64,000 nt of DNA from Octopus sinensis (Eukaryota). The translations under genes were made by a program, and so were the position numbers. The notes under the pieces were generated by a model. That model saw nothing but the letters and a program-made list of their open reading frames with translations, was not told the DNA's origin and searched no databases. The stretch lies in NCBI RefSeq assembly GCF_006345805.1, contig NC_043007.1:55490001-55554000 (forward strand). Direction: 5' to 3'. Shown one piece after another: positions 2,661 through 59,993 of this stretch (its first letter is position 1; every line of letters begins with the position of its first letter).

Positions 2661-3906
2661 CAGACATGCAGGAAGTAAATAGACATCTTTAATTTTCAAA
2701 ATTCCTGATCTAAGCATCTTAAGCTGTAGAATTTACAATGTAATTATTCTTTTTCATTCCAGGTGCCATTATATTAAACATTTGTGAAGAGTAACCATGC
2801 CACGCACAAAACATTCAGTAGAACTGTTAGATTTTCAAAGAGGTCGTATTGTTGGGCAATCTGAGGCTGGTCTTAGCCAACGAAAAATTGCCGAAAATCT
2901 TCAAATTCCTCTTGCTACTGTTAATAGAATTATAGTGCAATTCAAAAGCCAAGGAAAAGAATCAACAGATTCTCGTCCCAGCCGACCTGGGCCCTCGGAA
3001 AGGAAGCTTCACTGTTTGAAGAGAATTGTGGAAAACGAACCCAGTTCGAAGGCTTCTGAAATTGCAAAACAGCAATTAGTCCAAGAACGTGTGTTGCATA
3101 TCTACATAAGCTTGGGTATTATGGACGAGCAGCTAAAAGAAAACTTCTCCTTCAACCAATTAATATCACGAATAGAAAGAAATGGACTAAGGAGATGTCA
3201 GAAAATCCAGTTCATTTTGGGATAGAGTGATTTTCTCAGATGAATCTAGATTTGCAATATTTTCAGACAGTGGACGTGTTTGGGTTTGGAGGCTTCCCAG
3301 TCAAGAATTTGGTTCGAAACGACTCCAACCAACAATGAAGCATGGCGGTATCTTTGTAATGGTATGGGGAGCTGTCACCAGCAATGGTCCTTCTGAGCTG
3401 ATCGAATGTGTTGGAACCATAAACTCTTAAATATACACCGAAATACTTAAGCAAGGACTACTTCCGATGTATTCACACGATAACACAACGAAAAATGAGT
3501 TTTGGAAGATGGGGCTCCATGCCACACAGCGAAAAGGAATAAAAAATGGCCGACTGAAAATGGGATCAAAAAGCTTCCTTGGCCGAGCTAATCTCCTGAC
3601 ATGAACCGAATTGAAAATCTTTGGAGCATACTAGATAGAGCTATACGAAAAAATCGACAGAAACCTAAATCTAAATATGAATTGTTTCGATTGTTATGTG
3701 AAAAGTGGGCAGACATTCCACAAAAGACAATCACAGAGCTCATCAGTTGAATGCTAAAAAGAGTTTCTGAATTAAAAACTGCAACAAGAATGTCAACTAA
3801 ATACCGTATGTAGTCCTACCTATCGATTACAATTCAATTGTTCGCTTTGCGTATTAAATAAAAGATTTTGAAAATTAAAGGTGTCTATTTACTTCCTGTA
3901 TGTCTG
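2661..3906 (+). mobile_element. Tc1-family DNA transposon (full-length fossil)
   Basis: ~41-bp TIRs (cagacatgcaggaagtaaatagacatctttaattttcaaaa at 2661-2701, inverse at 3866-3906 with 2 mismatches). Left flank TA; right flank TG. Confidence 0.92.
2797..3813 (+). pseudogene. Tc1 transposase, DD34E, disrupted
   Basis: HTH-like N-terminus ([21 protein letters not shown]), FSDESRF, VWGA, EDGAPCH ... WPS*SPDMNRIENLW with 34 residues between D and E; frameshifts and stops. Confidence 0.9.
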
Positions 3907-3916
3907 TGAATGTATA

Positions 3917-4280
3917 TTCTTTTATTCTTTTACTTGCTTCAGTCCTTTGACTGCGGCTATGATGGAGCACCGGCATTAGTTGAACAAATCGACCTCCAGA
4001 CTTATTCTTTGTAAGCTTAGTTCTTATTCTATCGGTCACTTTGCTGAACCGCTAAGTTATGTTGACGTAACTACACCAACACTGGTAGTCAAGCAATGGT
4101 GCGCACAAACACAGACAAGCACACACACACACACACACACACACCATGGGCTTCTTCACGGTTCCGCCAACTAAATCCACTCACAAGGCTTTAAACGACC
4201 CAAGGCTATAGCAGAAGGCACTTGCCCAAGTTACCACGCAGTGTAGCTGAATCCGGAACCATGTTGTTGGGAAACAACCT
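3917..4280 (-). mobile_element. tRNA-derived SINE body and tail; its head is displaced to 8436-8470
   Basis: Same family as 25071-25447 and 26398-26808. The sequence stops at ggaaacaacct (4270-4280) and resumes at 8436 (ggaagcaagcttcatacaccataaccactcctg). Confidence 0.85.
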
Positions 4281-6307
4281 CTTTATTTCATTATATTGGC
4301 CATAAAGGCCTTACATAGAGAAAGGAAGCTGCGGGCTGGACATAGACATAACGTTTATGAAATGGAAAATGAAAATGATTATTAATGAGGGTAAAACGCG
4401 ACGCCCGCCGATCGTTGTTTACCCGAGAACATTGATCTTTTATAATACATTCATGAGGCAACAAACCTCTTACATTGTTCACAATATTCAATAACAAAAA
4501 CAAAACGAGGCACTAAGCCTCTTACGTTTTTTTCCCAATTAGGAACTTTCATGCCCGACAGGCATCTCGCCTAATTCAAGCACCTGGACGGTGCCAAGTC
4601 GGGCCACTTTAACATAAACTAAATGTATCCTCGGGGAAGGAGTTCATTACCCTGCACAAGTCGGTTTCCCATATGACCTCCGCAGCCACCTGCGTATGCC
4701 AGTTAGGGTCCTCAGTGCAGGATAGAATCCCTTCCCTCCGGCCTTTCTTTTTAAACTTCTTCACGAAGTTTTCTAACGTCCCTTCCTTATGGAAGAGGAT
4801 CACAAATTCTTCATCCGCCGCATAGGAAGGGCCCACAGTTTCCTCCTTCGATGGCACAATTCCCACCGACGAGGTTTCGGGATATGCCGGCAGTGTGTTA
4901 CGAACCGCCAGCAATGTCCCGTTTTTCTTTTTTTTTTTCCTTGAGCCACGGAAGGGTGAGATTCTTCTGTTTTGTTCGGAAGATTTTCCTTCCCTCCCGC
5001 AGCCTTCGGATCCTTCGATGGGCAACCATCGTTGCCCATCTGTCTTCTTTTCCTTTTTTCGAGGAGGACTCCACCTCCTTGATTGCCTCCATCTCTCCCT
5101 CCAATGGGGGAGAGGGGAGCGTTGTTTTATTAACTGCTCCAGGACCTTACTTTGGTCCTGGGAAGTTCTTTTTAATGTGGCCTGGTCCCAGGCACAGGTG
5201 ACACTTGGTGGGGGCGTCCCTCAAGCAACACAGGATACCTAGAGCCGGCCATTCTAAAAAAATCTGGAAATACCAGATTTTTGGCTGATTGGGTCCACAG
5301 AGTCAAAACCGCATTTGATACCTTCCAATCAGCCGCAGGCAAAATTTTTACATTGAAGAGCTTGGATCCGCTGCCACCCAGACCCCGGTAGATAGTGTCC
5401 TCTGTCCACGCGGGTTCTATTCTGGGTGGCAAACCACACCCAAGCTCTCTAGTCAACTTCCTCCCACAATACGTGGGAAAAAACAAAATCTCTCTGCCCT
5501 CCAAGGTCTGGCTCGCAAATTTGCGAGCCCCCTTAAGGGTGTCAAACAGCAACCACGCCGTCGCATATTTGCCCCCCACACCCTGGAGATGAATTTAATA
5601 GTTGGCAGATACTCTGTCAACTCCATTTCTATAGCAGTCCTTTCAAATAGGGCGATAGTGTCGAGCGACTTGGAGTAAGTCCTCAACACAACCGTCCTCA
5701 CTTCAAAGTCTTTCAACCACTGTTTGGATGGGACAATTTCCCACTCCAAAACATTGTCCTTGTTCTTTGCCATGTTTTTTAAGATAAAATGTTCCAAAAC
5801 AGCTCAGATAAAAAAATTTTTTAAATGAATGAAGAAAAAGAAAGAATTCAAAAGAAATTCACAATAAAAAGGAAGGAAGAATAAAACAATAAAAAGAAAG
5901 TCACAAAAAAGGATAGAAGAAGGAAAAAACAGTCTACACTTCAAAAAACACAGAAAGCAAAAAATCTTCAGGCCAGTTGTATATTCAATAAATTCTCACA
6001 ATTTTTGAAAAATAAATCTATTCTCTAAAAGTGAACAAATTTTTGGAAGCGAGATATGCCCCCCAAAACGACAATTCTTACAATTAAGTGAGAAAATCTA
6101 TTCACTCAACTGTAGGCAGACCAGAGTCCAGAATCCAGTGAGGGCTTCTTGTTTGTACAAAAATAATTACGGCAAATAACAAACCCCCACTGGACCCCCA
6201 AAAAACAAAAGTCTTACCTAACAGTTGAGCTTCAATTTTCGCCCGCTGTAAACTAGCGTGACGACTACTATTCAGTGGTACGAACAACACTGACAACACG
6301 CCTGCGC
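4281..6307 (-). mobile_element. ORF1-only non-LTR element, copy 1 (RRM-like plus CCHC gag-like protein, frameshifted; no RT)
   Basis: ORF pieces at 5453-5797, 5172-5579 and 4609-5025; AWLLFDTLKGARKFA (RNP1-like) and KCHLCLGPGHIKKNFP (knuckle). The 3' end is AATGAAATAAAG. Confidence 0.75.
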
Positions 6308-6318
6308 GGAAGCAAGCT

Positions 6319-8435
6319 CCTTTATTTCATTTAATTTGCCACAAGGGCATCACACAGAAAAAAGCTTTGCGGGCTGGACACGGACATTAATGGGATGAAT
6401 GATAATGATGCAAAAATGATGATGATGGGAGAAGACGAAAAGCGCCCGCCGACCCTCGCTTCTCTAAAACAATGTTCTTTTTTCCTTTTTCTTTTTTCCT
6501 GAAGCAATAAACCTCTTACATAAAAAACACAACGTTCAGAATTCTTTCTTTTTTTCTTTTTTAAAACACAAGGAGGCTATAAACCTCGTACATTACACAA
6601 AAAGTCACATATTTCACATTTTGTAGAAACGTTCAGGTTATCCGGCCGACCAGTCTCCTTGCTTCATTGAAGCATGTACTCGGTTCCACGCCGGACCACA
6701 CAGACTTAAATCTGTAGGAGTCCTCCGGGAAGGAATTCATGATCCTGCACAGATTACTATCCCATAGGACCTCCGCAGCCACCTGCGAAGGCCACTCAGG
6801 GTCCTCCGTGCCGGACAGAAGCTCCTCCCACCATTCTTTCCATTTTCTTGATTTCATTTTCTACGGTTCATCCTTTGTGGAAGAGGACTACAAATTCATC
6901 CTCCAGCGGCACACCCGCCGAAGGAGAATTGGGACACGCCGGCAGCGTGTCACAACCCACCGGCAATGTCCTGTTTTTCTTCTTTCTTTTCTTTTTCCCT
7001 TGGGCCGTGGGAGGGTGACGTTCCTGTGATGCGTGCAGCCGGTCCTCCTTTTCTCCCGCAGCCCTCAGGTCCTTCGGTGGGCAACCATTGTTGCCCACCT
7101 TTCGGTTTCGTTTTTTCGAGGAGGTGGAAACCTTCTCGTCATCCTCCTCCTTCTCTCCCTCCATTGAGGGAAAAATTGGTGGGAAGAAATTATTGAGGGC
7201 TTGGGTCTGCGGTTTGCCACCCGGAATTGAGCCCGAGTGGATAGAGGACTCTATCCGCCGGGGTCTGGGTGGTAGCAGTACCAAGCCTCCATCTCTCCCT
7301 CCAATGGGAGAGATTCCACTATTAACTGCTCCAGGATCCTATTTTGGTCCTTGGGGAGTTTTTCTTAATGTCGCCGGTCTCCAGGCACAGGTGACACTTG
7401 GGGGGGCGGGCGTCCCTAAAGCATCACCGGATACCTAGACCCGGCCATCCTCAAAAAATCTGGAAAGACCAGACTTTCGGCTGATTGGGTCCATAGGGTC
7501 AAAACAGCTTTTGACCCCTCCCAATCAACCGCAGGCAAGATTTTCACATTAAGCAGCTTGGTACTGCTACCACCCAGACCTCGGCGGATAGAGTCCTCTA
7601 TCCACTCGGGCTCAATTCCGGGTGGCAAACCGCAGACCCAAGCCCTCAATAATTTCTTCCCACAATAGCTGGGAAGGAACATGATTTCCTTGCCCTCGAG
7701 GGGCCGGCTTGCAAAATCGCAAGCTTCTTGTGGGGAGTCAAATAGCAACCAGACCGTTGCATACTTTTAATGGCTGGCATGTACTCTGCCAGCTCTTTCA
7801 AAATTGTGGCCTTCGGGAAGACGGTTATGGTGTCGAGCGACTTTGAATAAGTCCTCAGTATCACCGTCTTCCTTTCGAGCTCTTTCATCCCTTTTTTGGG
7901 AGGTGTTAAACCCCACACAAGTAATTCCTTCGCCATTTAAATGAGTTCAAATATAATTCAAAGTGTAAAATAAAGAAAGACACAAAAAAAGAAGGAAAGA
8001 CACAACAGAAGGGAAGAAATAAAATAAAAATAACAGTTCAAATAAAGTTCTTTTTTTTTAAAAAATAAATGATAGTGTGAAAAGAGTTCAAATCCTGGCA
8101 AAGAAATTAATCTTCGGCCGAAAAGGTACTCCTGGCCAATAATCCACAAGGAAAAAACAATTCCTCACAATTATGTGAGAAAACACTCACGTCTCCACCG
8201 CAAGGCAGACAAAAAGCTCCGAATCCAGTAAGGACTCCTTGCTAGTACAAAAAAATAAACCTACAAGCAACAAATCCTACTGGACTCAAGGAGCAAAAAG
8301 TCTTACCTTACAGTAGAGCGTCTTTCAGTTTTCGCCAGCTGCACACCAGCGTGACGTCTTCAATTCAATCTTCGCCAGCTGCACACCAGCGTGGCGACTT
8401 CAACAGGCGAGTGAAGAACACTAACGACCGGAACC
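6319..8435 (-). mobile_element. ORF1-only non-LTR element, copy 2 (diverged relative of copy 1)
   Basis: Colinear with copy 1: VILRTYSKSLDTI, LFDSPQEACDFA, AWVCGLPPGIEPEWIED, KCHLCLETGDIKKNSP, TEDPEWPSQVAAEVLW. Same 3' end. Confidence 0.75.
7179..7286 (+). repeat. 108-bp inverted copy of 7556-7663
   Basis: Near-exact reverse complement; absent from copy 1. Confidence 0.9.
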
Positions 8436-8470
8436 GGAAGCAAGCTTCATACCACATAACCACTCCTGTA
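8436..8470 (-). mobile_element. Detached 5' head (A-box part) of the SINE at 3917-4280
   Basis: The minus strand reads caggagtggttatggtgtatgaagcttgcttcc, matching the intact head gcaggagtggctgtgtggtaagtagcttgct at 26401. Confidence 0.75.
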
Positions 8471-9580
8471 TCTCATTACAATACATTTTCTATTCCTTTT
8501 TTTTACAATACTCCTTTATTTTTTCTTTCAATCGCTTCTATATTCCTATCCTCACCATCTTATCCATTTATTTAATTTTTTAGATCTTGCTATTTGTCAT
8601 TTTCTTTATTCCAATCTCCTACTCAAATTTCCTTTACTTGAAACCTCTCATTTTGTTCATGCCATTATTTTCCCCGTCCCCTCAATCTTTTTCTCCCTTT
8701 GCGCTTATTATTTCTACATTTATCGTTCCCTGTTTGACTCATTCTACAATGTCATTTCTTATACTTTAGTTATTCTCTTCTCTACATTCTGTCATGTATC
8801 ATAATTTCTCATATTTTTCTTTCTATTTCACTCACATCTTGTTTTACTAAACATCAATGTTTAGACTGTTTACTAAATATACATCTCTGCCCATCTCCAC
8901 GTACATGATAATGAACTGTATGGAGATATCTGTATATTATAAAAATTGAAGAGAAAGAAATTGCATAGGTTATAGGTTATTTTTCTAAGAATAATACATG
9001 ATGGGTCTTAGACAAATAAAACAGATTTAAAAGTTTACAAGAATTAACCTTTAAAGTTTTTCTCATTAAATAACATTCAAGATTTCCTTAATTTGAAATT
9101 GCCTTTTATAAAATTATATTATCTTTATTTGATTTAACATTCAAGATTTTCTGAACAAAGCAGGAATCTGATATTAAAAATAATTTGAATATTTCTTCAC
9201 CATATTGCACATTAACTGTATATAAATTTCATCGTGTTAAAATACCATGGTAATTTTTTTCTATTTGCAGTATCGTTTCGTCTAGCTTAAAAGTTCCTCT
9301 CCTTATGAATTTCCAATCGCATTTAGCACCCTTCCTGCATAACAATGCGATTAAAATTTTACTAATTTAAGGTTCCATGTTAAAATTACTATTTCTGGAT
9401 ATACATTTAGCGAAAAAATATAATCATTGTTTCCCTTATCTTAAATATAGCAGGGAATTCATTGACACATATTTCATTAAACTGAGTTCAAACTGTTGCC
9501 TAGGCAAACTTGAAAGGTTAAAGCAATGTATGTGTTATGCATTGTTGACAAGCCAACAGGTTTTCAAAGTTTATCTAATA

Positions 9581-25070: not shown

Positions 25071-25279
25071 TTTATTGTTTTATTGTTTTACTTGTTTCCG
25101 ATAGTTGACTGCGGCCATGCTAGATCATCGCCTTGAGCCGAACAAATGGACCCCAAGACTTATTCCTTGTAAGTCTAGTACTTATTCAATCGGACACTTT
25201 TGCCGAATCGGTTAGTTATGGGGACGTATACACACTAACATCGGTAGTCAAGTGATGGTGGGGGGACAAATACAGACAT

Positions 25280-25334
<55 letters not shown>

Positions 25335-25447
25335 TATCTATCTATATACACACGCACACACACACTTGCCCAAGGTGATACACAGTGGGACTGAACCCGG
25401 AACCATGTGGCTGGGAAGCAAACCTCTTATCACACAGCCACGCCTGC
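25071..25447 (-). mobile_element. tRNA-derived SINE
   Basis: Head gcaggcgtggctgtgtg...ggttccgggttcagtcc, internal (TA)/(CA) tract, tail gcatggccgcagtc...gaaacaagtaaaac. Confidence 0.9.
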
Positions 25448-26397: not shown

Positions 26398-26399
<2 letters not shown>

Positions 26400-26808
26400 C
26401 GCAGGAGTGGCTGTGTGGTAAGTAGCTTGCTAACCAACCTCATGGTTCCGGGTTCAGTCCCACTGCGTGGCATCTTGGGCAAGTGTCTTCTGCTATAGCC
26501 TCGGGCCGACCAATGCCTTGTGAGTGGATTTGGTAGACGGAAACTGAAAGAAGCCTGTTGTATATATGTATATATATATATAAGTATGTGTGTTTGTGTG
26601 TCTGTGTTTGTCCCCCTAGCATTGCTTGACAACCGATGCTGGTGTGTTTACGTCCCCGTCACTTAGCGGTTCGGCAAAAAGAGACCGATAGAATAAGTAC
26701 TGGGCTTACAAAGAATAAGTCCCGGGGTCAATTTGCTCGACTAAAGGCGGTGCTCCAGCATGGCCACAGTCAAATGACTGAAACAAGTAAAAGAGAAAGA
26801 GAAAGAGA
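26398..26808 (+). mobile_element. tRNA-derived SINE, full length
   Basis: A-box-like tggctgtgtgg, B-box-like ggttcagtcc, tail ggcggtgctccagcatggccacagtcaaatgactgaaacaagtaaaagag. Confidence 0.92.
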
Positions 26809-44729: not shown

Positions 44730-44780
<51 letters not shown>

Positions 44781-44790
44781 CATTATTATT

Positions 44791-45466
44791 CAGTAGTATA
44801 TTTTTTATATCGTGCTTTCACTGCACTACCGAGCACAGCCCTGTGTGCCTTGGGTATGTGCTGTGATTTATTGTGATGCTCTGATGGTTATTGTATGGAA
44901 AGTGTTCTGCGTAGGATGTGTGCAGTGCCTAGTAGTGCAACAATTTTCTGTATGTTATATGTGTTTGTAAGTCCTGGTGTTTTTGTTATGTATTTGTCTG
45001 CATATTTTTTTATCATGCCTAATGCACCTATTATGATAGGAATTGTTTCTGCTTTTAGATTCCACATTCTGGTTACCTCTATTTCCAGGTCTTTGTATTT
45101 TGAAAGTTTCTCCATTTCTTTTAGAGACACGTTGTCATCCGCTGGTATTGATACATCAATTAGAAAACATTTTTTTTCTTCATGATCTCTGACAGCTATA
45201 TCTGGTCTGTTGGCCTTAATTTCTCTATCTGTGTGTATTGGCATATCCCAGAGTATGGTTGCTTTCTCGTTTTCTGTGACCATCTTTTTTTCTGTTGTTA
45301 TTCCATAATGTTGGCATAGTTTCCAGTGTATGTAGGTCCCAACTCTGTCGTGTCTGTGAATATATTCCTTCTTAGCCAGGACTGGGCAGCCAGAGATAAT
45401 ATGATTTATTGTTTCTTGTCCATCTCCACATATTCTGCAGTTACTTGTTATATTTCTTTTCATTAG
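44791..45466 (-). mobile_element. Dong/R4-type LINE 3' fragment, family B (younger copy)
   Basis: ORF 44888-45463: CRICGDGQETINHIISGC...NRPDIAVRDHEEKKCFLIDVSIP...KLSKYKDL...IPIIIGALG; 3' UTR shared with 39600-39700. Confidence 0.92.
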
Positions 45467-48021: not shown

Positions 48022-51018
48022 CTAAGTCCAGTTTGCCGTGGCTGGCCACTGATCTAAGAGAGAGTTTGTAGCTGCAGCCCTTAGGTTACCTTCGTACCTT
48101 GCAGTGGGTTCATCTGGGATCCCGGAAAGCAGCTTGTCTAGATGTTTTTTGAAAATGTCCACATCCGTATCATGTAGATCTCTTAGTTTTCTTGGCAGTT
48201 TGTTGAAAAGCTGAGGGCCCCTGAACCCCAGGCTATTACAGTATCTGCTCCTTACCCTGGATGTGGAAGACGGGATCTTTGGCACCACACAGTGACGTCC
48301 TGTACGGGGATTGGAACAGCTCTCAATTCCAAAATTTGGTGCTAGTCCCTCCAGGATTTTCCATATGTATATCACTGCATATCTCTCTCGTCTTCGTTCC
48401 AAGGAGTACAAATTGAGTTCTCTAAGCCTCTCCCAATAGTTCTTTTCTTTCATGGTGGAAATCCTCTTGGTGAAATGTCTTTGGATTGTCTCAAGCTCTG
48501 TGGTTAGTTTGACACTATGCGGTGACCACAGTTGGGAGCAGTAGTCCAGGCGGCTTAGGACAAATGTCCTCCATAGTGTCAACATGGTCTCGCAGTCTCT
48601 TGTCTGGAATGTCCTCAGGATCCAGCCAGTGAGTCGTCTGCACATTGTCGCCACCTTCGCGATGTGTGAAGAAAAAGATGCATCGTCACTCATGTCTATC
48701 CCCAGGTCCCGTATTGATTTCGATACTGGGATTTCGATCCCTCCTGGACCAGTATAGTTGTGTTGTAATGTATATGTGTTTACAGCTTGATATTGTAAGG
48801 CTTGAAATTTACCAGCATTAAATTGCATGTTGTTGTCTTCAGCCCATTTGTATATGGCATCCAGATCTTGTTGTAAAAGGTCAGCATCAGCTGGGTTTTT
48901 GATTGCCTGTGCTACCTTTGTGTCATCAGCATAGCTAGTGAGGGATGTTGTTTGTGCTACCAAGGGCATGTCAGAGAGCGCCACCAAAAACAGCAAGGGT
49001 CCCAAGACTGTGCCCTGTGGCACCCCGCTTGCTATTGGTGTCTTTCCCGAGAGGGCTCCATTGGCTGCAACCATCTGGCTTCTGTCCTTCAGGAAGTCAT
49101 GTATCCACTCACCTACTTTTCCTGTTATGCCGAGTCTGAGTAATTTGTGACATATCACTCCGTGGTCGACTTTGTCAAAGGCCTTCGCAAAGTCGAGATA
49201 TACCACATCCACCTGTGAGCGATCCAGTAGTTGTTTCAGTACCCAGTCGTAGTGTTGTAACAGCTGCGTAAGGCAGCTTCTTCCTGGGCGAAAGCCATGC
49301 TGTGTGTCAGTGAGACGGTTAGTTTCTTCGAGGAACGTGATCAGTTTTTTTCTGATGATTCGTTCCATGACCTTACTTATGTGTGACGTCAGGGAGACTG
49401 GCCTGTAGTTTTTGGCCTCTGCTCTACTCCCTCCTTTGTGGATAGGGCAGTTTACCGTTAGCCAAGGAACCACTGAAAAGCCTCTTCAGTGGTCCCGCTA
49501 GGGCATGCCTGCATGTTTTTAGGAGGACTGCTGGGAATCCATCTGGTCCAGCAGCTGAGTTTATTCTCATTTCTTCTATGGCAGATATTACATCCCTCTC
49601 TGTTATGTCTATGTGGTCGATGGTTGTTGTTTGGTTTTGGAGTGTTGTGGCATCAAAGAAAACTTCTGGGTTTGTGATTTGCATGTGCCCCAGAGGGGGG
49701 ATGTGAACACACTTTTATACTGTTCCTTTAGTATTTCACTTATCCCTTGGGGGTCCTCAGTTAGAGAGCCCTTTTTATCAAAGAGTGGGCCAATCTTGCA
49801 GTGTACCGAGGTGGTTTCTTTCGCAAATTTAAAGAAGGCTTTAGGGTTTGTTTTAATATTCTCTATGGCCCTGGCTTCTCTCTCTGCCCTCTCCTTCTCA
49901 TAGGAAAGTTTGAGTGCAGTTTCCGTTTCAAAAAGTTTCAGGTGGAGTCCCTCATTGTTTCTCTGCCGTGCATTCAGTTGCTTCGAGAGCTTAGCTCTTC
50001 GCCTCATAAGTATTTTCCTGTCTCTGGGAATAACGTTCCTATGCCCGCTGGCTTTTTTCTCCGGGACAAACTTATGGCATATGTTCTGTATTGTTGTCAT
50101 GAAATGTTGGAAATGTGTGTTGGTGTCTTGTGTGGTGATGAAGTCACTCCAGTCATGTTTTCGGATCTCTTCGTTGATCTTCTTCCAGTTTGCCTTATGG
50201 AAGTTTAGACTGGATAGGCCTGTGGTATTTTCTAATGGCTGCGTCTCAACTAACTCTCTCATACCATATATCATTACCTCTACTAAGTTGTGATCTGAGA
50301 GAATTGTTAGTGTTACCATTATGTTGTGGATGAGCATCGGGTTGCTTGTGAAACAGAGGTCCAAGACATTCTCACCTCTTGTTGGCCAAAGCACTGCTTG
50401 CTCCATGAAAAACTTGCGTGTGAGAGCCAACAAGGACTCTGTCTGTCTCTGTTCAAGTGATGTCATTCCAGGGAGGAGATGGCCATCTGGCCATTTGACT
50501 TTCGGAAGGTTAAAATCTCCCAGCAGTAGAATGGTGTTACCCTGGTCCAGTTTGTCCAGGACTTCTTCTATTCTTCTGAGGCTATCTTCAAACACTCCTT
50601 CATGACTAGGGGTGTCTGGTGGCCGATATGTGACACATATTACTATTTTCGGTTGTTTCATGTGTACTATCAGTGTGTCACAGACTGAGTTTGAGTGTGT
50701 CAACAGTACTATGGGTGTGACATCTTCACGGACGTACAGGGCAACCCCACCATGAGTTCTTTCCTTCCTGTCCGACCGAAAAACAGTATACTTCGGTATG
50801 TGTATTTCTGCATCTGCTATACTGCTTGACAGGTGCGTTTCAGTCAGCGCTATGCATATTGCACGGTTGCTTGTGCTCAAGTCCCTAAGGTAAGGAATTT
50901 TACCCATATTAGTGGGTTTCACCAGACCTCTGACATTCAGCAGAAGCACTGGTGAGACACCCGGGGTGTCAATAAAGGCTGACGGTGTGGCACCTGGGCC
51001 GGCGTCAGCGGTGGCCAC
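48022..51018 (-). pseudogene. LINE-A ORF2 (APE endonuclease plus reverse transcriptase), frameshifted
   Basis: LLLNVRGL, ALTETHL, YRPP, LLGDFNLP, SDHN; YLDFAKAFDKVDHG, SGVPQGTVLGPLLF, YADDTK, YSLERRRERY. Confidence 0.92.
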
Positions 51019-51872
51019 CCTGGGTCCCTTGATTGTGGTGGTCTTGAGTGCTGTTGTGAGTGCCCCTGGCTCTGAAGACGATGTATCCAGGCCAGTTGTC
51101 CCACAATTTTCTCTGCTATTTCCACAAAATTTCTTTGTTCTGCTGCCGCCGTCTGCATTTCCTCTGCAAATGTGCGCCTTCTCCTTGTTGGGGCATTACG
51201 CACTATGTCTGCATATTTCTGGGGCAGCTTGTATTTGTTCTGGTTTTGGTTAAGGCATTTTGGTCGAGTGGGTTTGATGCAATTTCCATAGGGCCTGGGA
51301 TGAGCGAACCTGCATCCTTCCCCTGTTTCTCCATGCCAGCAGGTTCCATTCCGGAAGAATTTGCATGTTATCTGGGTTTTCTTGTCCCCAGTTCCTCTCT
51401 GTTTTTTCTTCCTCCGTTGGACGGTTGTCCACTGGTTCCTTTCTGCATAGGTCTTTTCATCCGGGTGGTTATTTTCTGTTTCCCCATCGCCGTCTATCTG
51501 TTGTTTGCCCTGCTTGCCTTCTTCGACTGTGGCAGTGGGCGTGTCATTTTTTGACACTCTGTGGTTGGTGTTTCCTGTTTCCATCTCTCTCTCTTTGTCT
51601 TTGTCCACCTTGAGGACTTGGCTTAGCAAAGCCATGTGTGGTGCAATGAGAGTGTAGGCCCTTTCGACTTCTCTTTTCTTCCTCTCTACTTGCGCCAACG
51701 TCCTCATAAAGCCATGGCTTTTCAGGGTCGCCGCTATGTTTTTAGTTGGTTGCGATCTGTCGGCCGAGGTCCATCCTCTGATGAAAACTTCCAGCTCTAC
51801 TTTCGTCCAGTTACGCTGGCTTTTGTTGACGCCAGTGTTTGCATTCACCTCTAATTTTTGCATGTTGTCCAT
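50937..51872 (-). CDS. LINE-A ORF1: Myb/SANT (trihelix)-like N-terminus plus CCCH zinc finger
   Basis: 311 aa open; RNWTKVELEVFIRGW...IAATLKSHGFMRTLAQVERK and CKFFRNGTCWHGETGEGCRFAH. Confidence 0.8.
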   Translation of the reverse strand: MDNMQKLEVNANTGVNKSQRNWTKVELEVFIRGWTSADRSQPTKNIAATLKSHGFMRTLAQVERKKREVERAYTLIAPHMALLSQVLKVDKDKEREMETGNTNHRVSKNDTPTATVEEGKQGKQQIDGDGETENNHPDEKTYAERNQWTTVQRRKKKQRGTGDKKTQITCKFFRNGTCWHGETGEGCRFAHPRPYGNCIKPTRPKCLNQNQNKYKLPQKYADIVRNAPTRRRRTFAEEMQTAAAEQRNFVEIAEKIVGQLAWIHRLQSQGHSQQHSRPPQSRDPGWPPLTPAQVPHRQPLLTPRVSHQCFC

Positions 51873-55794: not shown

Positions 55795-56700
55795 ATGTCC
55801 AGAGCATGGAGACCTGACGAACTAGATTTATTCGTACGAGCCTGGAAGTGCGCCGACGGAGATAGCCCTAGCGAGGTGATTGCGGCTGCGCTGAAGGGCA
55901 AAGGCTACAAGAGGACAGCGGCTCAGATGGAGCGAAAGAGACGGGAATTCGTGCGCTCATATGCGCTTATACGGTCGCACATTGGCGCACTTGATGCCAT
56001 CTTTGAGAACGAGCGGGGCAAAGATGGCAAGAATGGAGACGATGAAAGAAGTCACCCCCACCTGGTGGACGCCCGGGAGGAGGTTTTGAATGAGAAACCT
56101 GCCCGGGAAGTGAACCCAGGTGCAAGTTCTCCAGCCGGCAGCAAGGGCCATGGAGACGGAGAACCCGGTGAAGAGGTAGAGGGAGGAGGAAGAACTAAAA
56201 GAAGGGCTGGAAGAGCTAAAGGAAAAGCTCAAGCAGGACCAAAGGGTGAAAAAACCAGGAATAGAAGTGGAACCGCAAAAGATGGAAACAAACAGCGCAC
56301 ACGGGTGTGTAGGTTCTACCTTAGAGGTTCCTGCTGGCATGGAAAGCAAGGTGCAGGCTGCCGCTTTGCACATCGGGGACCCTGCCACAGAGACACGAGG
56401 CAGATGGACAAACCATCAACACAAGGAAAAGGGATGGACCACGCACCACTTGCCCCAAAGCGGAGGTACGCAGATGTGGTGCGTGCCACAAACCACCAAC
56501 ATGATGTTGTCGAAAGGGCAGCTGCTGAGCAACAATCTTTTTTGTGCATGGCACAAAAGATTGTACAGCAGCTGACCTGGCTTCATCAAACCCAAGCTCG
56601 CAGGTGGGACTACCCACTGTATACCAGACCACCACAGCAAACAGACCCAGGATGGACACCACCGGCAACAACGTACACCTCACCTCGATGCTCCTACTGA
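55795..56700 (+). CDS. LINE-B ORF1: trihelix/Myb-like domain plus CCCH zinc finger
   Basis: 301 aa; RAWRPDELDLFVRAW...IAAALKGKGYKRTAAQMERK and CRFYLRGSCWHGKQGAGCRFAH. Confidence 0.85.
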   Translation: MSRAWRPDELDLFVRAWKCADGDSPSEVIAAALKGKGYKRTAAQMERKRREFVRSYALIRSHIGALDAIFENERGKDGKNGDDERSHPHLVDAREEVLNEKPAREVNPGASSPAGSKGHGDGEPGEEVEGGGRTKRRAGRAKGKAQAGPKGEKTRNRSGTAKDGNKQRTRVCRFYLRGSCWHGKQGAGCRFAHRGPCHRDTRQMDKPSTQGKGMDHAPLAPKRRYADVVRATNHQHDVVERAAAEQQSFLCMAQKIVQQLTWLHQTQARRWDYPLYTRPPQQTDPGWTPPATTYTSPRCSY

Positions 56701-59648
56701 ACATCAGAGGACTGCAAACACTCAGTAACAGGACAAAAATCCCGTTCCTGAGAGACTTTGTTGCATGCAATCAAGCCTTATGCATAGCACTTACGGAAAC
56801 GCACCTGAAACCGGATATAGCAGATGCGGAGTTACACATACCACAGTATGCTGTACTACGGACCGACAGGAAAGAAAGGAGTCATGGAGGTGTTGCTATG
56901 TACATCCGTGAGGACCTCACACCCCAGGTCCTCTTGTCATACTCAAACTCGGTGTGTGACACACTAATTGTACATATTAGGCAACTTGATGTAGTTGTGT
57001 GTGCTACATATTGCCCTCCAGATGCCCCAAGCCATGTGGGCAAGTTTGAAGACTGCCTTATAAAAATAGAAGAAGTTCTAACCACATTAGAACAACACAT
57101 AAGTGTACTTCTTATGGGAGACTTCAATCTGCCCAATGTCAGATGGCCCGAGGGCCTTTCTCTCCCAGGAATGACAAGATGTGAACGAGGACAGGCGAGG
57201 TCCCTCCTGAACCTCATCAACACCCTGTACATGGAGCAGGTAATACTCCAACCAACCAGGGCAGGTAACACACTGGATCTCTGCTTCACAAATGACATGG
57301 ATCTCATCCATAATGTGAAAGTGACACTGACACTACTCTCGGATCACAACATGATAGAGCTGACCATGTACGGGTCAAAAGAGAGCACGGACATGCAGCC
57401 TGCAAGAAACCCTCAGAATCTTTCCAGCTTGAACTACCATAAGGCAAACTGGAAACAAATTGAGAAAGAGATCCTCAAACAAAACTGGCCTAAATGTCTC
57501 TCCTCGCCAGACATCGACGTGAAACTTCAACAATTCATGTCGGTAATGCAAGCCATATGCTACAAATGTGTCCCAGAGAGAAAGGCCACTGTACACAAGA
57601 ACAAAATCCCCAGAGAGAGGAAAATTTTAATGAGACGGCGTACAAAATTTTCAAATCGCCTAAACAAACAGATTGAAAGCAGTGAAAAGTCCCGCCTAAA
57701 AATAAAACTGTTGGAAATCGAAAGATGTCTGCAACTCTCCCATGAAAAGGAAAGAGCAGACAAAGAAGCCTGGCCTATAGACAACATAAAATCTAACCCC
57801 AGAGCTTTCTACAGGTATGCCAAAGAAACAGCTACGGTGCACTGTAGAATAGGGCCACTCCTCGAAAAGGATGGCACACTTACAGGAAAACCAATGAGGG
57901 TAAGTGAAATACTGAATGAACAATTCAAGAGTGTTTTCACTCCACCCCTTGGGCATTTCCAAATCAGCAATCCAACTGACTTCTTTACCACTGCAGATAT
58001 AGAATCAGAGGCGACGACGATAAATTACATCGATATAAAGGAAGACGATGTAATAAAGGCTATAGATGAAATGAAAACAGACTCAGCTACTGGCCCCGAT
58101 GGATTCCCGGCAATCCTCCTAAAAGCATGTAAGAGAGTCCTAGCAAGACCCCTGCAGTTCCTCTTTCAGAGCTTCCTTGCAGCTGGCAAACTCCCAAGAA
58201 AACGGAAGGAAGGTAAAATATGCCCCATTCATAAAGGAGGTAGCAGAGCGGAAGCCAAGAACTATAGACCTATCTCTCTGACCTCACACATCAGCAAGGT
58301 CATGGAATTAATAGTCAGAAGGAAGCTGATCACCTTCCTTGAAGAGAATGACTTGCTGCCCGACACCCAACATGGTTTCCGACCAGGGAGAAGCTGTTTA
58401 ACTCAGCTCCTTCAACACTATGACTGGGTGCTGAAACGGATGCTCAACCACTCAAATGTGGAAGTGATATATCTCGACTTTGCAAAGGCCTTTGATAAAG
58501 TCGATCATGGAATGATATGTCACAAACTGCGTGATCTCAACATAGTTGGAAAACTGGGAGAATGGCTTCATGACTTTCTGAAAGATAGAAGTCAGGTGGT
58601 AGTGGCCAATGGGGCCACTTCCATTAACACGCAAATAGTGAGCGGTGTTCCGCAGGGCACTGTTCTGGGACCACTACTGTTCATAATGGCCCTCTCAGAC
58701 ATGCTCTCAGCCACGCAGAGAGCCACGATCACAAGTTATGCAGATGATACAAAAGTTTCACAGGCAATACAGAACCCTGAGGACACTAAACACCTGCAAT
58801 GTGAGCTAGACAAAATATACAAGTGGGCCGAAAAGAATAGCATGCAGTTCAATGCTGAAAAGTTTCAAGCTCTATACTATCAGCATGCAAAACTAAATGC
58901 AATACCCAATGAATACATTGGACCCGGAGGAATAGCAATCCCAGAAGCACAATCAGTGCGTGACCTAGGTATTTACATGAGTGATGACGCGACCTTTCGT
59001 GTACATGTTGCTAAATTGGCAATGAAATGTAGACGACTGGCCCGATGGGTCCTCAGAACCTTTAGAACAAGAGAACAAGAAACCATGATGGTCCTCTGGG
59101 GGACACTTGTCCTAAGCCACTTTGACTACTGCTCTCAGTTATGGTCACCATCCAGTGTCAAGTTGATCACAGAGCTCGAGGCGATCCAACGTAGCTACAC
59201 GAAGAAGATAGCCTCTATGCAGAATGTAAGCTACTGGGAAAGACTCAAGAGATTAAAACTATATTCCCTGGAGCGTAGGCGGGAAAGATATGCCATAATA
59301 TACATCTGGAAGATCCTGGAGGGACGTGTCCTGAACTTTGGCATCGAGAGTTACGCAAATGCCAGAACTGGGCGCCACTGCGTGGTGCCTAGGACTCCAA
59401 ACTTGCCATCAAGATGTAGGACAAGATTCTGTGATAGCCTGGGCTTCCGAGGCCCACAGCTCTTCAATATCCTCCCGAAGAACCTGAGAGACCTGCATGG
59501 GGTGGATGCAGATGTCTTTAAAATGAAGCTGGATCTCTTCCTGTCAGGTGTCCCAGATGAACCAACTTCACGGCATGAGGGGCAGATGAGGGCAGCTGCA
59601 TCGAACTCTCTCATGCACCAAATGGCAGTTGCTAGAAAGCTTTCGTGA
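56544..59648 (+). CDS. LINE-B ORF2: APE endonuclease plus reverse transcriptase, uninterrupted
   Basis: 1034-aa open frame (true start may be a later Met) with LLLNIRGL, ALTETHL, LMGDFNLP, SDHN, YLDFAKAFDKVDHG, SGVPQGTVLGPLLF and YADDTK. Confidence 0.93.
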   Translation: MHGTKDCTAADLASSNPSSQVGLPTVYQTTTANRPRMDTTGNNVHLTSMLLLNIRGLQTLSNRTKIPFLRDFVACNQALCIALTETHLKPDIADAELHIPQYAVLRTDRKERSHGGVAMYIREDLTPQVLLSYSNSVCDTLIVHIRQLDVVVCATYCPPDAPSHVGKFEDCLIKIEEVLTTLEQHISVLLMGDFNLPNVRWPEGLSLPGMTRCERGQARSLLNLINTLYMEQVILQPTRAGNTLDLCFTNDMDLIHNVKVTLTLLSDHNMIELTMYGSKESTDMQPARNPQNLSSLNYHKANWKQIEKEILKQNWPKCLSSPDIDVKLQQFMSVMQAICYKCVPERKATVHKNKIPRERKILMRRRTKFSNRLNKQIESSEKSRLKIKLLEIERCLQLSHEKERADKEAWPIDNIKSNPRAFYRYAKETATVHCRIGPLLEKDGTLTGKPMRVSEILNEQFKSVFTPPLGHFQISNPTDFFTTADIESEATTINYIDIKEDDVIKAIDEMKTDSATGPDGFPAILLKACKRVLARPLQFLFQSFLAAGKLPRKRKEGKICPIHKGGSRAEAKNYRPISLTSHISKVMELIVRRKLITFLEENDLLPDTQHGFRPGRSCLTQLLQHYDWVLKRMLNHSNVEVIYLDFAKAFDKVDHGMICHKLRDLNIVGKLGEWLHDFLKDRSQVVVANGATSINTQIVSGVPQGTVLGPLLFIMALSDMLSATQRATITSYADDTKVSQAIQNPEDTKHLQCELDKIYKWAEKNSMQFNAEKFQALYYQHAKLNAIPNEYIGPGGIAIPEAQSVRDLGIYMSDDATFRVHVAKLAMKCRRLARWVLRTFRTREQETMMVLWGTLVLSHFDYCSQLWSPSSVKLITELEAIQRSYTKKIASMQNVSYWERLKRLKLYSLERRRERYAIIYIWKILEGRVLNFGIESYANARTGRHCVVPRTPNLPSRCRTRFCDSLGFRGPQLFNILPKNLRDLHGVDADVFKMKLDLFLSGVPDEPTSRHEGQMRAAASNSLMHQMAVARKLS

Positions 59649-59993
59649 AGTGAAACCAAGTAGCAACACCAAATGGCGGTGCCCCAGCATGGCCACAGCT
59701 CATAAGCTGAAACTAGAATCAATGAATCAATCAATCAATCAATCATGTACTGTGTCTATTAAATAGTATTTATCTCTCACCATATGGAGTAATTGTTGTT
59801 GATCTATCACGGCAATATAAAAAGCTGAAATTCAGTTTTACGTTGTTGTAGATACCTGAGCACAGGCTTTAGCAGAAGGCAAAAACACAACGTGAAATGA
59901 AACAGAAGGTAAAAACAACGGAAGGCAAAAACCAACCTGGGTAAATCGTACAAATTGTAAACTCATCCTCATCCTGCAAAACACAACCTAAAC

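What the first reader, a model, noticed from the sequence alone, without database searches (positions are those of the whole stretch)
4270..8470. Two diverged retroelements stacked at the identical 11-bp site inside a tRNA-SINE head: a SINE-targeting element
Seen: a minus-strand SINE is split 4.15 kb apart. The motif GGAAGCAAGCT occurs three times, at the left junction (4270-4280, decayed GGAAACAACCT), between the two inserts (6308-6318) and at the right junction (8436-8446). It lies between the SINE's A and B boxes. The two inserts are co-oriented but clearly diverged, so a recent tandem duplication is unlikely. Established: Tx1-clade non-LTR elements can be sequence-specific (Dewa at tRNA arrays, Keno at U2 snRNA, Tx1L in another transposon). 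Inference: two independent insertions at one target, each regenerating the TSD, i.e. a family that uses a high-copy SINE (or its parent tRNA gene) as a landing site.
Basis: partly seen in the sequence, partly recalled or inferred. Interest (0 to 1): 0.85.

Follow-up and report, generated by a model that had tools for sequence, protein, structure and literature searches.

The report
SINE-targeting ORF1-only retroelement, inserted twice
Two diverged copies of a 2-kb octopus retroelement that has only an RNA-binding gene sit back to back at one 11-bp site inside a SINE, and two more copies elsewhere in an octopus genome start at that same site, so this family appears to home to a SINE; this adds a new target to a known kind of site-specific element.

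Summary
A minus-strand octopus SINE is split at one point. The 11-mer AGCTTGCTTCC (GGAAGCAAGCT on the + strand) occurs once in intact SINE copies. Here it occurs three times: at both outer junctions and between two co-oriented inserts of 2117 and 2027 bp.

The inserts are about 74% identical in the ORF. They are not a local tandem duplication:
- ins1 is closer to a copy on another O. sinensis chromosome (80.8%) than to ins2 (74.0%; bootstrap P=0.001).
- ins1–ins2 divergence shows dN/dS = 0.25, so it arose in protein-coding lineages.

Two further copies in O. sinensis (L001, L002) begin directly after the same ...TTGCTTCC of a SINE head.

The element has no LTR or TIR, and AATAAA sits at its very 3' end. 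It carries one ORF (two RRM-like domains plus a CCHC knuckle) and no RT or endonuclease. Remote ORF1 homologues and a shared 3'-terminal motif link it to octopod LINEs with APE, RT and zf-RVT domains.

Best reading: an ORF1-only, trans-mobilised, site-specific non-LTR family that targets a SINE. Tx1 membership and the autonomous partner are untested. It is a new member of a known kind, of moderate interest.

The parts
8447..8475 (-). SINE head upstream of the insertion site, including the A-box-like TGGTTATGTGG
   Evidence: Aligns to the first ~26 nt of intact SINE copies. The A-box resemblance is by eye only; no tRNA call from ARAGORN or Rfam.
8436..8446 (-). Target 11-mer copy a (AGCTTGCTTCC on the minus strand), at the junction of the SINE head and the ins2 5' end
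   Evidence: Exact match. It is part of the SINE sequence.
6319..8435 (-). ins2: a 2117-bp ORF1-only retroelement copy. Leader with a 2x40-bp tandem duplication at 8324-8403; decayed ORF 6633-7936; CCHC remnant 7355-7396; internal inverted duplication 7179-7286 / 7556-7663; 3' motif GCCCTTGTGGCAAAT 6334-6348; AATAAA 6321-6326
6308..6318 (-). Target 11-mer copy b, between the ins2 3' end and the ins1 5' end
   Evidence: Exact match. No other SINE sequence lies between the two inserts.
4281..6307 (-). ins1: a 2027-bp ORF1-only retroelement copy. ORF 4609-5773 with frameshifts; CCHC knuckle (last Cys changed to Phe) 5162-5203; 3' motif GCCTTTATGGCCAAT 4295-4309; AATAAA 4282-4287
4270..4280 (-). 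Target 11-mer copy c, decayed (AGGTTGTTTCC on the minus strand, 2 mismatches), at the junction of the ins1 3' end and the SINE body
3918..4269 (-). Remainder of the split SINE: B-box-like GGTTCCGGATTCAGC, body, (CA)n at about 4118-4148, and the 3' part ending ...GTAAAAGAATAAAAG
   Evidence: 77.8% identical to positions 36-396 of the intact copy at 26399-26795
26399..26795 (+). Intact reference copy of the same SINE family (unoccupied site AGCTTGCTAACC)

Best explanation
The two inserts are separate copies of a non-autonomous, ORF1-only non-LTR retroelement family of octopods, about 2 kb long. Each copy has a leader, one ORF encoding two RRM-like domains, a CCHC zinc knuckle and a C-terminal domain, and a 3'UTR of about 330-400 nt. 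There is no RT, no endonuclease, no LTR, no TIR and no poly(A).

The family integrates in one orientation at one position of a high-copy SINE, between its A-box-like and B-box-like sequences, leaving the 11-mer AGCTTGCTTCC on both sides.

After a first copy had inserted, a second copy from a different, long-diverged lineage of the family inserted into one of the two regenerated 11-mers. That gave head-11mer-ins2-11mer-ins1-11mer-body.

Shown:
- The site is the same in four copies at three loci.
- The two window copies are not sisters.
- Their divergence arose under purifying selection on the ORF.
- The ORF is homologous to ORF1 of an octopod LINE that has APE, RT and zf-RVT domains.
- The last ~30 nt carry a motif found otherwise only at the 3' ends of two such LINEs.

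Inferred:
- Reverse transcription and the site-specific nick are supplied in trans by an autonomous LINE of that group, not yet found, that recognises the shared 3' module.
- AATAAA lies 1-2 nt from the element's end. Transcripts of a resident copy should therefore run into the downstream 11-mer and SINE sequence. That read-through tail could pair with the nicked bottom strand (...GGAAGCAAGCT-3') of a new SINE target. This would give the exact 3' junction without a poly(A) tail, as described for R1-type elements (from my own knowledge).
- Staggered nicks 11 bp apart would give the duplication.
- An insertion splits the SINE's internal pol III promoter and would silence that SINE copy.
For: **Triple 11-mer and empty site.** The 11-mer occurs three times here and once in intact SINEs, and the empty site reconstructs without gaps.

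**Same junction elsewhere.**
- L001 9464-9489...GGTAAGTAGCTTGCTTCC|TGTGCATGCG (O. sinensis CM016886.1).
- L002 15715-15740...GGTAAGAAGTTTGCTTCC|ACTGCGCATG (CM016865.1).
- All four 5' ends are homologous and start within a few nt of each other.

**Not a tandem duplication.**
- Over 620 well-aligned ORF columns, ins1-L001c identity is 80.8% against 74.0% for ins1-ins2.
- Informative sites grouping ins1 with L001c number 19, against 6 grouping ins1 with ins2.
- Bootstrap P(ins1 nearer ins2) = 0.001.
- Nei-Gojobori dN/dS for ins1-ins2 is 0.25 (pS 0.505, pN 0.185, 193 codons). The synonymous excess has binomial P = 4e-9. All six pairs give 0.16-0.33.

**Retroelement nature.**
- No TIR or LTR.
- AATAAA at the extreme 3' end and no A-tail.
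- An AF2 model of the L001 ORF (pLDDT 80) matches tandem-RRM proteins.
- A CCHC motif is present in the ORF, and Pfam zf-CCHC is found in homologues.
- 47 remote homologues were found; the ten whose source was looked up include six octopod proteins.
- One homologue (P0003) is followed by Exo_endo_phos + RVT_1 + zf-RVT.

**Shared 3' module.** GCCNTTNTGGCNAAT occurs only at the ins1 and ins2 3' ends in the window (0.17 expected) and only at the 3' ends of the L003 and L006 LINEs in eight loci.

**ORF1-only architecture is ancestral.** The ORF ends at about the same place in ins1, ins2 and L002c, with no ORF2 remnant.

**Precedents.** Tx1 families target other transposons (PMC4494074). Tandem insertions separated only by the TSD are reported for target-specific Dada elements (PMC3706591).
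Against: - Only four copies at three loci could be examined. L001 and L002 were found through the element's own ORF.
- The L001 and L002 copies lack their 3' ends and the SINE remainder. They break off at microsatellite-like sequence, so only the two window copies show a 3' junction.
- No RT or endonuclease partner with this target was found.
- All four copies have broken or truncated ORFs, so current activity is not shown.
- The 3' read-through pairing is pure inference.
- The tRNA origin of the SINE head is not confirmed by covariance models.
- The shared 3' motif is short (about 25-30 nt) and BLAST alone does not score it as significant.
Confidence: 0.78

Rival explanations
1. A single insertion was later duplicated in place, by unequal exchange or slippage between its two 11-bp TSDs. 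The two copies then decayed to about 74% identity.
For: The structure 11mer-E-11mer-E-11mer is what such an exchange would give. The host SINE is itself old (77.8% identical to a near-consensus copy), so there was time for much decay.
Against: - ins1 is closer to a copy on another chromosome than to ins2 (80.8% against 74.0%, bootstrap P = 0.001).
- Only 6 informative sites group ins1 with ins2, against 19 and 12 for the alternatives.
- dN/dS of 0.25 between the two copies (P = 4e-9) does not fit neutral decay in place.
- Private changes are unequal: 60 against 38 in the first part of the ORF, 146 against 75 overall.
Confidence: 0.04
2. The SINE head is carried along by the element. One ancestral insertion into a SINE was followed by amplification of a 'SINE head + element' composite through 5' transduction. 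The shared 5' junction in L001 and L002 would then reflect descent, not repeated targeting.
For: L001 and L002 show the SINE head upstream but no SINE body downstream. Tx1 families carrying snRNA-derived heads at their 5' ends are known (PMC4494074).
Against: - In the window, ins1 is preceded by only the 11-mer and not by a SINE head. At least one of the two window copies therefore integrated on its own at that exact site.
- The heads in L001 and L002 start exactly at SINE nucleotide 1. That fits ordinary SINE copies. Read-through from an upstream pol II promoter would bring extra flank.
- Pol III transcription of a 2-kb unit rich in T-runs, with the B box displaced, is unlikely (inference).
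- This model still needs site-specific insertion to explain the window.
Confidence: 0.1
3. The 11-mer is not duplicated target DNA made by staggered nicks. It is copied from a target-homologous 3' extension of the element's RNA, or is the element's own terminus, and integration occurs at a flush site. This concerns only the origin of the repeat, not site specificity.
For: AATAAA sits 1-2 nt from the element's end. Transcripts must therefore end in downstream SINE sequence. Sequence alone cannot tell a TSD from an RNA-templated copy of the target.
Against: No direct evidence either way. An 11-bp stagger is within the range seen for APE-type LINEs (from my own knowledge).
Confidence: 0.25
4. The inserts are non-autonomous DNA transposons of a small-RNA-gene-targeting kind (Dada-like) that recognise the tRNA-like SINE head.
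For: Dada elements lack TIRs, target tRNA and snRNA genes at fixed positions, and occur as tandem insertions separated by the TSD (PMC3706591).
Against: - The flanking repeat is 11 bp, not 6-7 bp.
- There is no DDE transposase or remnant of one.
- The ORF is homologous to a LINE ORF1 that is followed by APE/RT.
- The 3' end shares a motif with LINE 3' ends and carries AATAAA.
- No sub-terminal inverted repeats.
Confidence: 0.02

Closest known systems
Target-specific Tx1-clade non-LTR retrotransposons that insert into other transposons (Tx1L in piggyBac Tx1D; Tx1-Mar in Mariner-N4_AMi; Tx1-9_AMi in Harbinger; Tx1-8_Crp in LTR elements; Kojima 2015, PMC4494074)
   Same: A retroelement family integrates at a fixed position and in a fixed orientation inside another interspersed repeat. 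Non-autonomous passengers share the target (SINEU with Tx1-Mar). Relatives of the present element have APE + RT + a C-terminal zinc-binding domain and lie within simple or satellite repeats.
   Different: The target here is a SINE, which the papers read here do not list as a target. The copies seen have no ORF2, and no RT is available to place the family in the Tx1 clade. The flanking repeat is 11 bp.
HAL1 (half-L1), the ORF1-only L1 derivative of mammals
   Same: Leader + ORF1 + 3'UTR without ORF2. The ORF1-only architecture is shared by diverged copies, and ORF1 evolved under purifying selection (dN/dS 0.16-0.33). This implies a long-lived lineage that uses its own ORF1p and a partner's ORF2p.
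   Different: HAL1 is not site-specific and its ORF1 is of the coiled-coil/RRM/CTD type. Here ORF1 has two RRM-like domains plus a CCHC knuckle, and integration is at one site.
R1/R2-type rDNA-specific elements and their non-autonomous derivatives (SIDEs)
   Same: Strict site and orientation specificity in a multicopy target. No poly(A) tail. The proposed use of read-through target sequence to set the 3' junction follows R1 (from my own knowledge). Non-autonomous derivatives share the site.
   Different: The target is a selfish SINE, not a host gene. R2 uses a restriction-like endonuclease and has a single ORF without an RRM/CCHC ORF1. No ribozyme or co-transcription signal was seen here.
Dada DNA transposons targeting tRNA and snRNA genes (PMC3706591)
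   Same: Fixed insertion point within a pol III-type small-RNA-like sequence. Tandem insertions of two families separated only by the TSD.
   Different: Dada encodes a DDE transposase and makes 6-7 bp TSDs. The present element has a LINE-type ORF1, a LINE-type 3' end and an 11-bp repeat.

Membership tests
Sequence-specific non-LTR retroelement (general) | Independent copies lie at the same nucleotide position of the same target sequence | tested here: met
   Four copies at three loci follow ...TTGCTTCC of the SINE head. Both 3' junctions that could be seen are followed by the 11-mer. The sample is small.
Sequence-specific non-LTR retroelement (general) | Fixed orientation relative to the target | tested here: met
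   All four copies are co-oriented with the SINE.
Sequence-specific non-LTR retroelement (general) | Non-LTR hallmarks: no LTR or TIR, LINE-type ORF1, 3' end defined by RT recognition, flanking target duplication | tested here: met
   No terminal repeats. The ORF is homologous to a LINE ORF1. A tandem-RRM fold plus CCHC. A 3' motif shared with LINE 3' ends. An 11-bp flanking repeat.
Sequence-specific non-LTR retroelement (general) | Encodes its own RT and endonuclease (autonomous) | tested here: not met
   No RT or endonuclease in ins1, ins2, L001c or L002c. The ORF ends before any ORF2. The family is therefore non-autonomous.
Tx1 clade | The RT domain groups with Tx1 in a non-LTR RT phylogeny | not testable with these tools
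   The element has no RT and its partner was not found. The relative in L003 has APE + RVT_1 + zf-RVT and only weak similarity to human L1 ORF2p. No reference Tx1 RT set was available.
Tx1 clade | APE-type endonuclease | tested here: inconclusive
   Absent from the element. Present in the ORF1-homologous LINE of L003 (Exo_endo_phos, E = 7e-8).
HAL1-like ORF1-only non-autonomous LINE derivative | ORF1 retained and conserved, ORF2 absent, in a lineage that kept propagating | tested here: met
   The same architecture in three copies with pS about 0.4-0.56 between them and dN/dS 0.16-0.33.
HAL1-like ORF1-only non-autonomous LINE derivative | Shares its 3' end with an autonomous partner LINE | tested here: inconclusive
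   A 3'-terminal motif of about 25-30 nt is shared with two octopod LINEs (L003, L006) that sit in other targets. No partner with an identical tail and the same target was found.
Dada DNA transposons | DDE transposase (or a derivative of an element that has one) and 6-7 bp TSD | tested here: not met
   No transposase. The flanking repeat is 11 bp.
tRNA-derived SINE (the target) | tRNA-like head with A and B boxes | tested here: inconclusive
   A-box-like TGGCTGTGTGG and B-box-like GGTTCAGTCCC are visible by eye. ARAGORN and Rfam give no tRNA match.
tRNA-derived SINE (the target) | 3' tail shared with a partner LINE | tested here: met
   The SINE tail ...GGCGGTGCTCCAGCATGGCCACAG...GACTGAAAC matches the 3'UTR of the APE/RT LINE at window 55795-59735.

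The most novel reading that the evidence does not exclude
An ORF1-only retroelement lineage has kept strict homing to one 11-bp site of a SINE through deep divergence (pS about 0.5). It does so either because its own RRM-CCHC protein, or the read-through target-homologous 3' RNA tail, contributes to target choice, rather than only the partner's endonuclease. On that reading a non-autonomous element would guide a borrowed RT to a safe harbour inside another parasite and silence that SINE copy by splitting its pol III promoter.
Probability: 0.12. Interest if true: 0.75.

Novelty: new member of a known kind. Interest (0 to 1): 0.5.

Why it matters
Site-specific non-LTR elements are studied as natural examples of 'safe-harbour' integration and as leads for targeted gene insertion. 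Their known targets are rRNA, snRNA and tRNA genes, microsatellites, DNA transposons and LTR elements.

A family that homes to a defined site in a SINE making up roughly a tenth of an octopus genome (11.6% SINEs in O. vulgaris, PMC13282606) would add a new class of target. It would be an instance of one parasite living on another and inactivating the SINE copies it enters. It would also supply a very large natural set of target sites for studying how the partner endonuclease reads its target.

The ORF1-only architecture under purifying selection is a second example, outside mammals, of the HAL1 strategy. It also bears on octopus genome annotation: split SINEs and 2-kb 'unknown' repeats would be resolved.

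Tried and rejected
- **Pfam on the raw ORFs and on P0001** gave nothing. The domains were recognised only by motif, remote homologues and a structure model.
- **I first read the ORF's C-terminal stretch as a remnant of the APE N-terminus**, which would have made the element an internal-deletion derivative. I rejected this because ins2 and L002c are colinear there and all three ORFs stop within a few codons. There is also no similarity to the ORF2 of L003 or L006.
- **Search for more copies or the partner through proteins.** Only P0001 and P0002 are close. The window's own ORFs are not on record.
- **Remote ORF1 families** (L003, L004, L005) are not at the SINE site.
- **ORF2 relatives** found with the L003 RT gave no informative names. 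The two short ENA contigs tried do not reach a 3' end.
- **Exact 3' 12-mer hits elsewhere** (window 21158, L002 31201) are chance matches.
- **The two other LINEs in the window** are not the partner. The 55.8-59.7 kb copy shares its tail with the SINE instead, and the 44.9 kb fragment ends in (AAT)n.
- **A SINE tail fragment 9.7 kb downstream in L001** showed no evidence of being the missing remainder of the split SINE; no matching TSD was found.
- **Similarity of the element's end to the SINE's own 3' end** (...GAAATAAAG against ...GAATAAAAG) is too weak to use.
- **Which insert is younger** could not be settled. TSD state favours ins2, private substitutions favour ins1, and both scenarios need two mutations in copy c.


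Full report
**1. What is in the sequence**

The region 3918-8475 is one SINE on the minus strand, interrupted once. All sequences below are read in the SINE's own orientation.

- The SINE head ends ...GGTATGAAGCTTGCTTCC (8446 down to 8436).
- A 2117-bp insert follows (ins2, 8435-6319).
- Then AGCTTGCTTCC again (6318-6308).
- Then a 2027-bp insert (ins1, 6307-4281).
- Then AGGTTGTTTCC (4280-4270).
- Then the SINE continues CAACAACATGGTTCCGGATTCAGC... to about 3918.

The exact 11-mer occurs only twice in the 64 kb, at the two junctions. About 0.03 matches are expected.

Intact copies of the same SINE carry the 11-mer once. These are window 26399-26795, window 25086-25447 and three in L002. The two flanks joined with a single 11-mer align without a gap to five intact copies. 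The 11-mer is therefore SINE sequence that is repeated at each element boundary.

The site lies between an A-box-like TGGCTGTGTGG and a B-box-like GGTTCAGTCCC. This is by eye only. ARAGORN and Rfam do not recognise the head as a tRNA.

**2. The inserts**

ins1 and ins2 are colinear from first to last base and are co-oriented with the SINE. Identity is 68% over all columns shared by the four copies and 74% in the first 620 ORF columns.

They have no terminal inverted or long terminal repeats. Each ends ...AATGAAATAAAG(G) with no A-tail, so AATAAA sits 1-2 nt from the end.

Each carries one decayed ORF of about 390-420 codons. The ORF contains a CCHC knuckle: KCHLCLGPGHIKKNF in ins1 at 5162-5203. 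Pfam finds nothing in the raw ORFs.

ins2 has two private rearrangements:
- a 2x40-bp tandem duplication in the leader (8324-8403);
- a 108-bp inverted copy of its own ORF segment (7179-7286 against 7556-7663, 99% identical).

**3. Copies elsewhere**

A frame-corrected ins1 protein found only two close proteins among 5.8 billion, both from Octopus sinensis. Their loci were fetched.

- In L001 (CM016886.1) the SINE head ...GGCTGTGTGGTAAGTAGCTTGCTTCC is followed directly by TGTGCATGCGTTG..., the 5' end of a third copy.
- In L002 (CM016865.1) ...GTGTGGTAAGAAGTTTGCTTCC is followed by ACTGCGCATGTGCG..., the 5' end of a fourth copy.

The four 5' ends are homologous and start within a few nucleotides of one another. 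Both external copies break off inside the element at microsatellite-like sequence. The rest of the SINE is not found downstream, so they contribute 5' junctions only.

SINEs make up about a tenth of an octopus genome (PMC13282606). The same nucleotide and orientation at three loci is therefore far beyond chance.

**4. Two insertions or one duplicated insertion?**

The host SINE is itself only 77.8% identical to a near-consensus copy, so an old duplication in place had to be excluded by other means. Two tests speak against it.

- *Relatedness.* In the best-aligned 620 ORF columns, ins1 is 80.8% identical to the L001 copy but 74.0% to ins2. Informative sites group ins1 with L001c 19 times, with L002c 12 times and with ins2 6 times. 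In 2000 bootstraps ins1 was nearer to ins2 in 0.1%.
- *Selection.* The differences between ins1 and ins2 are strongly biased to synonymous sites (pS 0.505, pN 0.185, dN/dS 0.25 over 193 codons; binomial P = 4e-9). All six pairs give 0.16-0.33. Decay in place would give a ratio near 1.

Most of the divergence therefore arose while the ORF was under selection, in separately evolving active lineages. The two inserts are independent arrivals. Since ins1 is preceded only by the 11-mer, at least one of the two integrated on its own at exactly the site used by the other.

Which came first is not resolved. The perfect copies a and b against the decayed copy c favour a younger ins2. The larger number of private changes in ins2 points the other way, or to a more divergent source.

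**5. What kind of element**

An exhaustive HMMER search with the intact L001 ORF (P0001) found 47 remote homologues at 19-36% identity. Ten were looked up by source; six of these are octopod proteins (Octopus, Argonauta). Several of those scanned have Pfam zf-CCHC.

An AlphaFold model built with those homologues (mean pLDDT 80, above 90 over residues 10-200) matches tandem-RRM proteins such as SFPQ, NONO and hnRNP A1 UP1. The ORF is thus two RRM-like domains plus a CCHC knuckle plus a tail. From my own knowledge, this is the layout of one common class of LINE ORF1 proteins.

One homologue (P0003, locus L003) is followed directly by an ORF2 with Exo_endo_phos, RVT_1 and zf-RVT domains, with weak similarity to human L1 ORF2p. 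That is an APE-type LINE of L1/Tx1-like architecture.

In ins1, ins2 and L002c the ORF stops at about the same place, followed by the 3'UTR. No ORF2 remnant was found. The ORF1-only layout is therefore ancestral to lineages that differ by pS of about 0.5. This is a HAL1-like strategy.

**6. A shared 3' module**

The last ~30 nt of the element are:
- ins2: GCCCTTGTGGCAAATTAAATGAAATAAAGG
- ins1: GCCTTTATGGCCAATATAATGAAATAAAG

They resemble the 3' ends of two octopod LINEs:
- L003: GCCCTTGTGGCCAATAAAAAGAATTAA
- L006: GCCCTTGTGGCTAATAAAGAAATTG

The pattern GCCNTTNTGGCNAAT occurs in the window only at the two insert ends (0.17 expected). In eight fetched loci it occurs only at those two LINE ends. 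It can form a small hairpin with one compensatory change between ins1 and ins2. That rests on two sequences and is weak.

The L003 LINE is flanked by (ATT)n on both sides. The L006 LINE fragment lies inside a 31-bp satellite. These are single cases but suggest that this LINE group tends to sit in repeats.

I infer that the 2-kb element borrows RT and endonuclease from a member of this group. No partner at the SINE site was found.

**7. Mechanism proposed**

*Shown:* a fixed site, a fixed orientation, an 11-bp flanking repeat, no poly(A), and AATAAA at the very end.

*Inferred:*
- The partner's endonuclease nicks the bottom strand at the left edge of AGCTTGCTTCC.
- The element's RNA, which must extend past its terminal AATAAA into the downstream 11-mer and SINE sequence, pairs with the freed ...GGAAGCAAGCT-3' end. 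This sets the junction as in R1-type elements.
- A second nick 11 bp away gives the duplication. Each insertion thereby regenerates two potential targets, which allows stacking.
- The insertion separates the A-box-like and B-box-like sequences and should silence that SINE copy.

**8. Comparison and novelty**

Target-specific Tx1 families that insert into piggyBac, Mariner, Harbinger and LTR elements, together with their non-autonomous passengers, are described in PMC4494074. Tandem insertions separated only by the TSD are described for Dada (PMC3706591).

I found no report of a SINE as the specific target, nor of this family, in the octopus repeat papers searched. That is an absence in a limited library, not proof.

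Membership of the Tx1 clade could not be tested because no RT is available. I rate the finding a new member of a known kind: a site-specific non-LTR element living in another repeat. Its two unusual traits are the SINE target and the ORF1-only lineage under selection. Interest is moderate.

**9. Limits**

- Four copies, two of them incomplete.
- No partner found.
- The species of the window is not identified. It is Octopus-like by its SINE and by the protein hits.
- All mechanistic steps beyond the junction anatomy are inferred.

Noticed in passing
window 55795-59735 (+), 48022-51872 (-), 26745-26795: Two copies of an APE/RT LINE: ORF1 with a CCCH-like zinc motif, and an intact 1034-aa ORF2 in the + copy. 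The 3'UTR of the + copy (...GGCGGTGCCCCAGCATGGCCACAGCTCATAAGCTGAAAC..., then an (AATC)n tail) matches the 3' tail of the octopus SINE. This LINE, not the 2-kb element, is the likely mobiliser of the SINE.
   Followed up: partly
window 7179-7286 vs 7556-7663; 8324-8403: ins2 carries a 108-bp inverted copy of its own ORF segment. It is 99% identical and is flanked by a ~24-bp direct repeat CCCATTGGAGGGAGAGATGGAGGC. ins2 also has a 2x40-bp tandem duplication in its leader. The near-identity of the inverted arms contrasts with the decay of the rest of the copy; a recent template switch or gene conversion could explain it.
   Followed up: partly
L003 7700-13375; L006 8057-11110: Two LINEs that share the element's 3' motif sit in repeats. 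The 5.6-kb L003 LINE is flanked by (ATT)n on both sides. The 5'-truncated L006 LINE lies inside a 31-bp satellite (AGATGTTCCATCACAGTTGTCACCAGTCTTC)n. The whole LINE group may be target-specific.
   Followed up: partly
window 4455-4531 and 6501-6593: Each 3'UTR holds two copies of a 21-25-nt motif (sense strand ATGTAAGAGGTTTGTTGCCTC and variants). The motif can form a small GAGG...CCTC hairpin and loosely resembles the target 11-mer. Its meaning is unknown.
   Followed up: no
window 6190-6215 and 8290-8310; L001 9585-9600; L002 15830-15845: A conserved CTGTAAGGTAAGAC block in the leader of all four copies looks like a splice donor. L001 has a polypyrimidine tract plus AG just before the ATG. 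A retained intron in the leader is possible but was not examined.
   Followed up: no
L001 10960-11010; L002 17640-17810: Both external copies lose their 3' part at microsatellite-like sequence: (CA)-rich/(TA)n in L001 and (TG)n in L002. The SINE remainder is missing downstream. The cause could be deletion, an assembly problem at microsatellites, or an unusual integration; this is not resolved.
   Followed up: partly
L003 7090-7350: A ~260-bp palindromic (MITE-like) insertion sits inside another copy of the SINE, at ...ACTTAGCGGT.
   Followed up: no
window 2797-3225 (+); 44888-45463 (-): A Tc1/mariner-type HTH ORF (HTH_SB, HTH_23) lies just beyond the SINE's 3' end. Separately, a LINE ORF2 C-terminal fragment with a zf-RVT-like motif ends in an (AAT)n tail at about 44740-44800.
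   Followed up: partly
L002 10001-36638: The NCBI gene model for P0002 ('K02A2.6-like', with an rve domain) is a chimera. It uses the first 45 codons of the element's ORF as an exon.
   Followed up: no
window 26424-26434, 25414-25424; L002 5860-5870, 7551-7561, 12869-12879: Unoccupied SINE copies vary at the site (AGCTTGCTAACC, GGTTTGCTTCC, AGCTTGTTTAC three times). All three occupied SINEs have ...TTGCTTCC. The element may prefer one SINE subfamily.
   Followed up: no
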